DNA of 64,000 nucleotides. Source: Lytechinus pictus. Taxonomy: Eukaryota. The stretch is from NCBI RefSeq assembly GCF_037042905.1, contig NC_087248.1:1860001-1924000 (forward strand), in the 5' to 3' direction. Positions 21,824 through 23,463 of this stretch are shown piece after piece. Made by a program: the position numbers and the translations under genes. Within the stretch, counting starts at the first letter, position 1, and each line of letters opens with the position of its first letter. The notes beneath the pieces are model-generated. The model was not told the DNA's origin. It made no database searches and worked only from the letters and a program-made list of their open reading frames with translations.

Positions 21824-22690
21824 CAGTGCGTATCAAAATAAAGTTACACTTTGAAAAGCCCTGGGAATAAAAAAATATACAACATGTGGGTATTTTTTTC
21901 ACATATAAACTTGGGTTTGGGTCTCATCTATCCAATGAAAGTAAAGGTTTTGACAGAATGTTACACTTGAGTGAGCACTGTTCATTTTTTGTAAAGCTCG
22001 CAGAAATCTGTTTGCGCAGAAATGCTCATTTTCAGGCTGTGTCAAGGGGAAAGGGCGAAATCAAACTTACCCTTCGAAACATTTCTCATACATTTCCCTT
22101 GCACTTTTAGTCAATTGAAATAAAACGGATACATTCAAGCATTTTGTATAAATTTTGCCACCCAAATTGAAATTTCAACACTTTAGTAAGCACAACCTTT
22201 ACCCTTTTTGTGCCAGCTGGATCTGAGGACATAACCGAATCTGAACAAAAGTTTATATCAGACATCTCAGCATTTTTTCACTAATTTTTATCATTTAAAG
22301 TGAGTTTACATTTCATTTTTCATTTAATACTAGTTTCTCCACACTTTTTCCAAGCTTGACAATGATTAACAAAATGAAAATCAAGCTTAAGCCCTTTCAT
22401 GTAAATCACAGCTCAGTGTAAAGCAAATATCGTCACGATGACCTCGGTGTGTGGGGGAGTGGGGGTGGGGCGCAATGTACTCTCTGAAGTGTTTTGGGCA
22501 AGGAAACAATTAAAAAAAAAGGAAGAAGATATCTTGAAATTAATTTACTAGCTAAATTCCACGTGTTCTTCATGATTAAGATCTACTTTTATTCGCATAA
22601 CTATTTTCAAAATTCTGCGCAAATCACTTTTCACTAACTTTTCAGAAGTAAGTGGTGCTCACTCAAGCATAATATTTTTCGACAGTGTTA
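21824..22690 (+). mobile_element. Tc1/mariner-like MITE, right end lost
   Basis: TA|CAGTGCGTATCAAAA start; internal inverted matches (TGAGTGAGCAC ~21968 / GTGCTCACTCA ~22655); truncated by the tRNA-bearing repeat. Confidence 0.55.
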
Positions 22691-22699
22691 TCGTGGCCG

Positions 22700-22889
22700 C
22701 GGCGTTCAAAGCTGGAGGCCCGGGTTCGATTCCCGGCAGAGACATTTTTTCGGCATCACCAATTTTTCCAAAGGGTAGATAGCTCTGGGGAACCTTGATT
22801 TAAGCTACGCCTACCATTGTTCTCTTCTATCACAAAATATTTAAATAAAAAAGAGTTGCCAAAGCTGCTGTACATGTGTAACTTCACAC

Positions 22890-22933
<44 letters not shown>

Positions 22934-23400
22934 AAAGTTATACATGTACAACAGCTTTGGCAACTCTTTTATTTAAATATTGTAAAGAACTGGATGAAGA
23001 GAACAATGGTAGGCGTAGCTTAAATCAAGGTTCCCCAGAGCTATCTACCCTTTGGAAAAATTGGTGATGCCGAAAAATGTCTCTGCCGGGAATCGAACCC
23101 GGGCCCCGAGCTTTGAACGCCGGTGCCTTAACCACTAGACCACAGAGACGGGTTAGTGGCTAGGGCGACCCGATCCGATTGACCGTCAGATAGACAGATT
23201 TTCGACACTATACCAATTATAATTTCCTTTGTCGGGTGAAGGTGGGTTTCGAACAATGACAAGCCGCCATGCTTCAGCTGGATCAAAGCTAATGCTTTGA
23301 TACAGTACACGTATGGGAGAAAGTATACAAATGTGTAAAGTTATACATGTACAACAGCTTTGGCAACTCTTTTATTTATGTTCTCTTCATCCAGTTCTTT

Positions 23401-23407
<7 letters not shown>
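22700..23407. mobile_element. Unclassified (TA)n-associated tRNA-bearing repeat: full unit 22929-23407 plus inverted partial copy 22700-22891
   Basis: ~190-bp inverted arms around (TA)n; 47-bp direct repeat (22929-22975 / 23332-23378); 29-bp inverted repeat (22977-23005 / 23379-23407). Confidence 0.8.
23078..23149 (-). tRNA. tRNA or tRNA-like gene with anticodon TCA (opal-suppressor type), tRNA-Glu-like body
   Basis: GTCTCTG TG GTCT AGTGGTTA AGGC A CCGGC GTTCAAA GCTCG GGGC CCGGG TTCGATT CCCGG CAGAGAC A then TTTTT; 72 nt with A and B boxes; one anticodon-stem mismatch. Confidence 0.7.

Positions 23408-23463
<56 letters not shown>
23404..23463. repeat. (TA)n microsatellite; a second tract at ~22893-22927
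   Basis: Direct reading. Confidence 0.95.

What the first reader, a model, noticed from the sequence alone, without database searches (positions are those of the whole stretch)
22929..23407. (TA)n-embedded element with split direct plus inverted terminal repeats (A-B ... A-B')
Seen: a ~480-bp unit bounded by (TA)n on both sides. A perfect 47-bp block A occurs in direct orientation (22929-22975, 23332-23378). A perfect 29-bp block B follows it, forward the first time and inverted the second (22977-23005, 23379-23407). The tRNA lies between. This fits neither a SINE (no tail, tRNA internal) nor a plain MITE. Known: mixed direct/inverted ends occur in DIRS/Ngaro tyrosine-recombinase elements and Penelope-like elements. 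Inference: a non-autonomous, microsatellite-targeting member of such a group, or an undescribed class.
Basis: partly seen in the sequence, partly recalled or inferred. Interest (0 to 1): 0.75.

Follow-up and report, generated by a model that had tools for sequence, protein, structure and literature searches.

The report
tRNA-carrying Penelope-type repeat in (TA)n
The "element with split direct and inverted ends" is one insertion of a young repeat of about 404 bases that carries a tRNA gene, occurs over a thousand times in this sea-urchin genome, and lands in (TA)n microsatellites with the layout typical of Penelope-like retrotransposons but without their hammerhead ribozyme.

Summary

- **Block A.** It repeats because 22929-23378 is 1.1 head-to-tail monomers of a 403-405-bp repeat.
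- **Block B'.** It is a separate, 29-36-bp, 5'-truncated copy lying head-to-head against that array.
- **Copy number.** The family has at least 278 matches and 1299 candidate places on most chromosomes. Arrays reach about 21 monomers.
- **Ends.** Read in the tRNA's sense, copies end at one of two fixed points 41 bp apart. They start at variable points.
- **Target.** 25 of 28 3' ends and 10 of 15 5' ends abut (TA)n, against a 0.4% background.
- **Inverted pairs.** In 5 of 5 simple head-to-head pairs, one arm has the long end and the other the short end.
- **Parallel in the same genome.** Intact Penelope-like elements (PLEs; reverse transcriptase plus GIY-YIG endonuclease) show the same anatomy and the same (TA)n target.
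- **Difference.** The monomer has no hammerhead ribozyme. It carries a well-formed tRNA gene with a UCA anticodon and a T-run terminator.

Best reading (0.74): a non-autonomous parasite of PLEs, akin to animal "retrozymes" but with a tRNA where they have the ribozyme. No autonomous partner sharing its 3' end was found.

The scan has found this family before on other DNA of this genome.

The parts
22695..22892 (+). Second, more divergent copy of the family. It is 5'-truncated inside the tRNA, has a long-form 3' end, and lies tail-to-tail with the main unit.
   Evidence: I3 arms at 22695-22749 and 23073-23127 (93%); I1 arms of 82 nt at 100%; 22700-22890 matches monomer 194->1 at 90%. On its left it abuts an unrelated high-copy repeat.
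22893..22927 (.). (TA)17 microsatellite shared by the 3' ends of the two tail-to-tail copies.
   Evidence: read directly.
22929..23331 (-). One complete 403-bp monomer, with the tRNA sense on the minus strand. Its long-form 3' end is at 22929, next to the (TA)n.
   Evidence: 97-99% identical copies genome-wide, in tandem arrays with a 403-405-bp period.
23078..23149 (-). tRNA gene module with anticodon UCA. It has A and B boxes and is followed at once by T5 (plus strand 23073-23077).
   Evidence: ARAGORN. Rfam RF00005 scores 54 bits here and 65 bits in other copies. All of about 50 copies keep TCA. The window copy has a G>C mismatch in the anticodon stem.
23332..23378 (-). In the tRNA sense this is the 5'-truncated start of the 1.1-monomer arm.
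   Evidence: 23332-23378 equals monomer 1-47 at 100%. Tandem continuation is seen in all arrays.
23379..23407 (+). It is joined head-to-head and has the short-form 3' end.
   Evidence: 23379-23414 equals monomer 77->42. It shares a private G variant with block B, absent from 56 other copies and from 99.8% of the family's read depth (place 22990).
23404..23463 (.). (TA)30 microsatellite on the far side. Together with 22893-22927 it is the split target tract.
   Evidence: read directly. Searches show (TA)n flanks at most family insertions.

Best explanation
This is one insertion of a young, non-autonomous retroelement family with a monomer of about 404 bp. The family is copied into (TA)n microsatellites by the reverse transcriptase/GIY-YIG endonuclease of Penelope-like elements (PLEs) living in the same genome.

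**Shown.**
- The family is dispersed and also forms arrays.
- Its 3' ends fall at two fixed points 41 bp apart, and its 5' ends vary.
- Both sides abut (TA)n.
- Head-to-head pairs carry one long and one short end.
- Real PLE families in this genome do exactly the same.

**Inferred.**
- The endonuclease nicks the (TA)n tract, and the nick primes reverse transcription of a multimeric (or circular) element RNA from its 3' region.
- That gives the 1.1-monomer arm (23378 down to 22929).
- A second priming or template switch on the other DNA strand gives the short inverted arm (23379-23407).
- The element resembles animal non-LTR retrozymes but has a tRNA gene where those carry a hammerhead ribozyme.
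For: - **Copy number.** One search gives 278 matches and 1299 candidate places on most chromosomes, with arrays of up to about 21 monomers.
- **Ends and target.**: 3' ends at monomer position 1 (15 cases) or 42 (9 cases); 5' ends scattered from 62 to 369. 25 of 28 3' ends and 10 of 15 5' ends abut (TA)>=4, against a 0.4% background.
- **Inverted pairs.** Five of five simple head-to-head pairs (L005, L006, L016, L026 and the window) have one long and one short end.
- **PLEs in the same genome.**
  - intact PLE reading frames of 816-954 aa with RVT_1 plus a C-terminal GIY-YIG domain.
  - at least three PLE families end in (TA)n with short and long forms differing by 36-57 nt.
  - their inverted pairs L035/L036, L039/L041 and L057/L058 are each short plus long.
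- **Literature.** (PMC8557442): PLEs show 5' truncation, partial tandems, an adjacent inverted 5'-truncated copy, a 30-40-bp tail at one end, and microsatellite bias, with (TA)n reported for Naiads.
- **Single event.**: the two arms in the window share a private variant.
- **Array homogeneity.**: monomers differ by a median 0.5% within arrays and 1.7% between arrays.
- **Fold.**: the monomer RNA folds as a long rod (z = -6.0), like retrozyme RNAs (PMC7229834).
Against: - No autonomous PLE sharing the element's 3' end was found among 38 sampled PLE loci from at least six families. The best tail alignment is not significant (p about 0.03-0.05 before correction for eight tests).
- There is no hammerhead motif. 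Canonical PLEs and retrozymes have one.
- RNA reads cover the family on both strands but show no discrete ends. Genomic DNA carry-over multiplied by copy number cannot be excluded.
- The rod fold scores about as well on the opposite strand and has no covariation support.
- No empty allele of this site was seen, because the contigs break at (TA)n.
Confidence: 0.74

Rival explanations
1. It is a classical tRNA-derived SINE, transcribed by RNA polymerase III and mobilised by a LINE with (TA)n target or tail specificity.
For: It carries a tRNA module with intact A and B boxes. It shows 5' truncation and a fixed 3' end, as in target-primed reverse transcription.
Against: - The 5' ends never cluster at the tRNA start, which would be monomer position 221.
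- The tRNA is internal and is followed at once by T5-6, which would stop polymerase III.
- Multi-monomer arrays are common, as are head-to-head arms that both begin at the 3' end with a 41-bp offset.
- (TA)n lies on both sides, not only at the tail.
Confidence: 0.08
2. It is an ordinary satellite DNA spread at the DNA level, by unequal exchange, excised circles or fold-back repair, into fragile (TA)n tracts, with no reverse transcription.
For: Long homogeneous arrays exist. (TA)n tracts are fragile and prone to recombination (established knowledge). The monomer is palindrome-like on both strands.
Against: One end is fixed at two precise positions while the other varies. Many dispersed copies are shorter than one monomer. 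The long/short asymmetry of inverted pairs is identical to that of PLEs that encode a reverse transcriptase.
Confidence: 0.08
3. It is a non-autonomous DIRS/Ngaro element moved by a tyrosine recombinase, or a DNA transposon (MITE or Helitron) with mixed ends.
For: Helitrons insert at A|T and can form tandems (established knowledge).
Against: The A-B' joint is unique to this locus, and inverted junctions fall at different positions elsewhere. One end is variable in every copy. There are no constant inverted terminal repeats and no 5'-TC...CTRR-3' Helitron ends.
Confidence: 0.04

Closest known systems
Penelope-like elements (canonical EN+ clades with the CX2-5CxxC linker; also Naiads) and their non-autonomous derivatives
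   Same: - Fixed 3' end, 5' truncation, and partial tandems that act like pseudo-LTRs.
- An adjacent inverted 5'-truncated copy, and a tail of about 40 bp on one end only.
- Insertion into microsatellites.
- The same anatomy is seen in PLEs of this genome and described in PMC8557442.
   Different: It has no reading frame and no hammerhead, and it carries a complete tRNA gene. No sequence similarity to the 3' end of any sampled PLE was found.
Metazoan non-LTR retrozymes (Cervera and de la Pena 2020, PMC7229834; Li et al. 2026 preprint, 10.64898/2026.07.22.740005)
   Same: Short tandem repeats of 150-450 bp, from dimers to long multimers; AT-rich; strongly self-paired RNA; non-coding; found together with PLEs.
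   Different: The defining type I hammerhead is absent, and a tRNA sits in each monomer instead. Circular RNA has not been shown here.
tRNA-derived SINEs
   Same: A tRNA-derived module with polymerase III boxes; non-autonomous retroposition with 5' truncation.
   Different: The tRNA is internal and is terminated at once. The 5' ends are not set by the tRNA. Copies form multimers and inverted arms. There is no LINE-type tail.
Helenus / Cassandra (TRIMs with a small-RNA gene in the LTR; Kojima 2024, PMC10886601)
   Same: A small-RNA gene module carried by a non-autonomous retroelement that is not LINE-dependent. Cassandra also forms tandem arrays.
   Different: Those have two LTRs, a primer-binding site, a polypurine tract and 4-5-bp target duplications. 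Here one end is variable and the target is (TA)n. Helenus is not reported from echinoderms.

Membership tests
PLE-type (Penelope-like) insertion / PLE-dependent non-autonomous element | Fixed 3' end with frequent 5' truncation | tested here: met
   3' ends at monomer position 1 (or 3) in 15 cases and position 42 in 9 of 28; 5' ends scattered from 62 to 369.
PLE-type (Penelope-like) insertion / PLE-dependent non-autonomous element | Partial tandem (pseudo-LTR) arrangement | tested here: met
   1.1 to about 21 head-to-tail monomers; the window holds 1.1.
PLE-type (Penelope-like) insertion / PLE-dependent non-autonomous element | Adjacent inverted 5'-truncated copy, with a 30-40-bp tail on one end only | tested here: met
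   5 of 5 simple head-to-head pairs have one long and one short end, 41 bp apart. Same-genome PLE pairs behave alike, with tails of 36-57 nt.
PLE-type (Penelope-like) insertion / PLE-dependent non-autonomous element | Microsatellite target bias | tested here: met
   35 of 43 ends abut (TA)>=4, against a 0.4% background.
PLE-type (Penelope-like) insertion / PLE-dependent non-autonomous element | 3'-end sequence shared with an autonomous PLE of the same genome | tested here: inconclusive
   no significant match in 38 sampled loci.
PLE-type (Penelope-like) insertion / PLE-dependent non-autonomous element | Hammerhead ribozyme in the terminal repeat (canonical clades; absent in Naiads) | tested here: not met
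   no CUGANGA core on either strand of a monomer dimer; no hammerhead family at E<=1. The same regular expression finds the motif in most sampled PLE copies.
Metazoan non-LTR retrozyme | Type I hammerhead in every tandem monomer | tested here: not met
Metazoan non-LTR retrozyme | Short tandem monomers of 150-450 bp with a highly self-paired RNA | tested here: met
   for the monomers.: -133.7 kcal/mol, z = -6.0. The antisense strand folds about as well and there is no covariation.
Metazoan non-LTR retrozyme | Expressed as circular RNA | not testable with these tools
   One search shows family-level RNA reads on both strands. In tandem DNA a back-splice cannot be told from an array junction.
tRNA-derived SINE | The tRNA head defines the 5' end, and the whole unit is a polymerase III transcript | tested here: not met
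   5' ends do not cluster at the tRNA start. T5-6 follows directly after the tRNA.
DIRS/Ngaro | Constant inverted or split direct terminal repeats with an internal complementary region | tested here: not met
   the A-B' joint is private to this locus, and the junction positions differ between loci.
MITE | Constant terminal inverted repeats plus a fixed-length target duplication | tested here: not met
   most copies have a single orientation, and the inverted arms vary in length.
Helitron | 5'-TC...CTRR-3' ends with a subterminal GC-rich hairpin | tested here: not met
   the fixed end reads ...CTTTACACA and the other end is variable.
Helenus (tRNA-bearing TRIM) | Two LTRs, primer-binding site, polypurine tract, 4-5-bp target duplication | tested here: not met
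   variable 5' ends and (TA)n flanks; not reported in echinoderms.

The most novel reading that the evidence does not exclude
The tRNA is not a passenger. It would be the working counterpart of the hammerhead in PLEs and retrozymes. RNase P and RNase Z would cut multimeric transcripts at every tRNA and release unit-length, rod-shaped RNAs that serve as templates for PLE reverse transcription. That would be a host-enzyme-processed 'retrozyme without a ribozyme'. A less likely extension is that the released UCA tRNA is charged and reads UGA.
Probability: 0.15. Interest if true: 0.85.

Novelty: new variant of a known kind. Interest (0 to 1): 0.6.

Why it matters
How PLEs transpose is still unsolved: why they make tandem and inverted copies, why one end carries a tail, and what the hammerhead is for.

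This family is small, very young and abundant. It reproduces the whole PLE insertion signature without a hammerhead and carries a tRNA at the corresponding place. That makes it a compact natural substrate for testing which RNA features the PLE machinery needs. It also allows a test of whether host tRNA processing can replace self-cleavage.

On the practical side, the family explains thousands of 'opal suppressor tRNA', 'MITE' and 'TIR' false calls in sea-urchin annotation. It also marks (TA)n tracts as PLE landing pads.

Tried and rejected
- **miRNA hits.** MIR7723, mir-5014 and others at 22791-23032 are all far below their gathering scores. They come from the tail-to-tail palindrome and the TA run.
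- **Programmed UGA recoding of PLE reading frames by the UCA tRNA.** The in-frame TGAs in PLE copies align to Arg codons of intact relatives, at different positions. They are CGA>TGA decay.
- **A tRNA inside PLEs.** None was found in 32 PLE loci, apart from adjacent copies of this family.
- **Shared 3' tail with PLEs.** Only a weak colinear match to the L031 family, not significant.
- **Covariation for the rod fold.** None; the family is too young.
- **Rfam at gathering thresholds.** It does not detect even the PLEs' own minimal hammerheads, so the hammerhead test rests on the motif search.
- **Empty-site or polymorphism test with reads.** The contigs break at (TA)n.
- **Left-hand repeat 22000-22692.** It is an unrelated high-copy family, not part of this element.

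Full report
**1. The observation**

- Block A (47 bp) is exact at 22929-22975 and 23332-23378.
- Block B (29 bp, 22977-23005) recurs as a perfect reverse complement at 23379-23407.
- (TA)n runs lie at 22893-22927 and 23404-23463.
- A tRNA lies at 23078-23149 on the minus strand, with anticodon TCA (ARAGORN; Rfam tRNA 54 bits).

Positions about 22695-22892 are the reverse complement of 22929-23127, across the first (TA)n (I1 is 82 nt at 100%, I3 is 55 nt at 93%; 90% over 194 nt).

**2. What the repeats are**

Searching the window's own genome with 22929-23407 gave 278 matches from 1299 candidate places on most chromosomes.
- Almost all matches cover query 1-450 and overlap the next match by 46 bp. 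This is the signature of a head-to-tail repeat with a 403-405-bp period.
- Arrays reach about 18 monomers (C4 near 8.10 Mb) and about 21 monomers (C4 near 26.00 Mb).
- No match extends into query 451-479.

Block A therefore repeats because 22929-23378 is one monomer plus the first 47 bp of the next. BLAST of the monomer against the window shows 23379-23414 to be monomer positions 77 down to 42 in the opposite orientation. B' is thus the tip of a separate, inverted, very short copy.

RNA reads of the family continue after 23378 with the normal tandem sequence (83 reads). Inverted junctions at other loci fall at other monomer positions, for example 193/136, 129/344 and 279/170. The A-B' joint is private to this locus.

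**3. Anatomy of the family**

I mapped 22 independent loci. Read in the sense of the tRNA:
- Copies end at one of two fixed points. The long form ends ...CTTTACACA (monomer position 1; 15 ends). The short form ends ...CTTTACAATAT (position 42; 9 ends). They are 41 bp apart.
- Copies start at scattered positions, from 62 to 369. There is no clustering at the tRNA start.
- 25 of 28 3' ends and 10 of 15 5' ends abut (TA)>=4, against 0.4% of random window positions. The target is therefore the microsatellite itself, not a tail.
- In all five simple head-to-head pairs (L005, L006, L016, L026 and the window), one arm has the long end and the other the short end.
- Monomers differ by a median 0.5% within arrays and 1.7% between arrays. 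One seven-monomer array has at most one difference between any two of its monomers.

In the window, blocks B and B' share a G that is absent from 56 other copies and from 99.8% of the family's read depth (place 22990). The two arms therefore came from one template or one event.

**4. The same anatomy in real Penelope-like elements of this genome**

A GIY-YIG family search found 59 matches from 468 candidates.
- Larger loci hold intact reading frames of 816-954 aa with RVT_1 followed by a C-terminal GIY-YIG domain.
- These frames carry the Cys-rich linker C-x4-C-x2-C before the nuclease.
- Most copies have a minimal hammerhead core (CUGANGA...CGAAA) 73-155 nt before their 3' end, and that end abuts (TA)n.

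Three families show short and long 3' forms:

| PLE family (example loci) | Short form, nt (hammerhead start to (TA)n) | Long form, nt (hammerhead start to (TA)n) |
|---|---|---|
| L034-L041 | 86-91 | 142 |
| L053-L059 | 73 | 107-114 |
| L051/L060 | 82 | 139 |

In each family the short boundary sits at an internal TA-rich patch, just as in the monomer. Their head-to-head pairs (L035/L036, L039/L041, L057/L058) are each one short plus one long.

Craig et al. 2021 (PMC8557442) describe this set of features for PLEs:
- 5' truncation and partial tandems that form pseudo-LTRs;
- an adjacent inverted 5'-truncated copy;
- a 30-40-bp tail often at one end only;
- microsatellite bias, with (TA)n reported for Naiads.

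**5. What differs**

The monomer has no reading frame and no hammerhead. A monomer dimer has no CUGANGA core on either strand, and no hammerhead family appears at E<=1.

Instead, each monomer carries a well-formed 72-nt tRNA.
- The acceptor stem has seven perfect pairs, and the A and B boxes are present.
- The family's commonest version (31 of 44 copies matched) has a fully paired anticodon stem. A subfamily turns its G-U pair into A-U.
- The window copy has a G>C mismatch.
- All of about 50 copies keep the TCA anticodon.
- T5-6 follows directly after the tRNA, so polymerase III would end there. The element as a whole cannot be a polymerase III transcript of SINE type.

The tRNA ends 149 nt before the long-form 3' end. 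In the long forms of four of the five PLE families with one, the hammerhead starts 137-155 nt before that end (107-121 nt in the fifth), so the positions are close.

The monomer RNA folds into one long rod (-133.7 kcal/mol, z = -6.0). This resembles the 'highly self-paired' retrozyme RNAs (PMC7229834). However, the antisense strand folds about as well (z = -5.2), and the family is too young to show covariation.

**6. Expression**

In two RNA-seq runs of the same species, the family is covered at a depth of about 40-270 on both strands, while the unique flank is near zero.
- No places stand out where many molecules begin or end.
- With more than a thousand copies, a little genomic DNA in the libraries could give the same picture.
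- Transcription is therefore likely but not proven, and processing at the tRNA borders is unsupported.

**7. Mechanism**

*Shown:* the copy anatomy, the target, and the parallel with coding PLEs.

*Inferred:*
- A PLE endonuclease nicks (TA)n, and the nick primes reverse transcription near the 3' region of a multimeric or circular element RNA.
- This yields the arm 23378 down to 22929 (5' truncated, long end).
- A second priming or template switch on the opposite strand yields the 29-bp arm 23379-23407 (short end).
- The target tract is left split on both sides.
- The copy at 22695-22892 is a separate insertion into the same tract.

**8. Rivals**

- **LINE-dependent SINE.** It is contradicted by the internal, terminated tRNA, the unclustered 5' ends, the multimers, and the paired arms that both start at the 3' end.
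- **Purely DNA-level satellite spread.** It does not explain one fixed and one variable end, or the long/short pairing shared with PLEs.
- **DIRS, MITE, Helitron or Helenus.** All fail on their defining constant ends (PMC10886601).

**9. Weak points**

- I found no autonomous partner by 3' similarity among 38 sampled PLE loci.
- The best tail alignment, to the L031 family, is not significant.
- Repbase and Dfam could not be queried, so a prior library entry cannot be excluded.
- Paper searches found no description of a tRNA-bearing PLE-dependent element.

**10. Earlier notes of this scan**

I looked these up after my own reading was formed.
- They report the same family at several other places in this genome, which they call the painted sea urchin.
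- They reach the same reading: more than 2,000 copies, (TA)n target, PLE-type insertion.
- They are unverified AI notes and are not counted as evidence here. They do mean that the scan has found this family before on other DNA.

**11. Verdict**

The family is a new variant of a known kind: a hammerhead-less, tRNA-carrying, PLE-type non-autonomous tandem retroelement. Interest 0.6.

Noticed in passing
window 23078-23149 (minus strand) and all family copies: The repeat-borne tRNA keeps a UCA (UGA-reading) anticodon in all of about 50 copies examined. The family's commonest version has a fully paired anticodon stem, and its D and T arms resemble tRNA-Glu (from memory). The window copy has a stem mismatch. 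Nothing shows that the tRNA decodes.
   Followed up: partly
window 22000-22692: An unrelated high-copy repeat (at least 2354 candidate places, 92-93% identical copies) abuts the truncated left copy. It is also covered by RNA reads on both strands.
   Followed up: partly
L034-L041, L051/L060, L053-L059 (own-genome PLE loci): Three Penelope-like families with minimal hammerheads each have two alternative 3' ends, 36-57 nt apart. The short end sits at an internal TA-rich patch. Inverted pairs always combine one short and one long end.
   Followed up: yes
L031, L048, L051 (PLE nuclease region): In-frame TGA codons in decayed PLE copies align to Arg codons of intact relatives. This is CGA>TGA decay, not recoding.
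   Followed up: yes
L068:6696-8270: A family monomer is interrupted by a 1.2-kb insertion inside its tRNA part, with about 5 nt of the monomer duplicated at the two edges. A truncated PLE nuclease fragment follows 210 bp after its 3' end.
   Followed up: no
L063:7146-7165 and L002:2097-2142: A 20-30-bp mini-copy of the family's 3' tip lies between two (TA)n runs, right after a PLE 3' end. At L002 a 15-nt fold-back of the tRNA sequence sits at the 5' junction.
   Followed up: no
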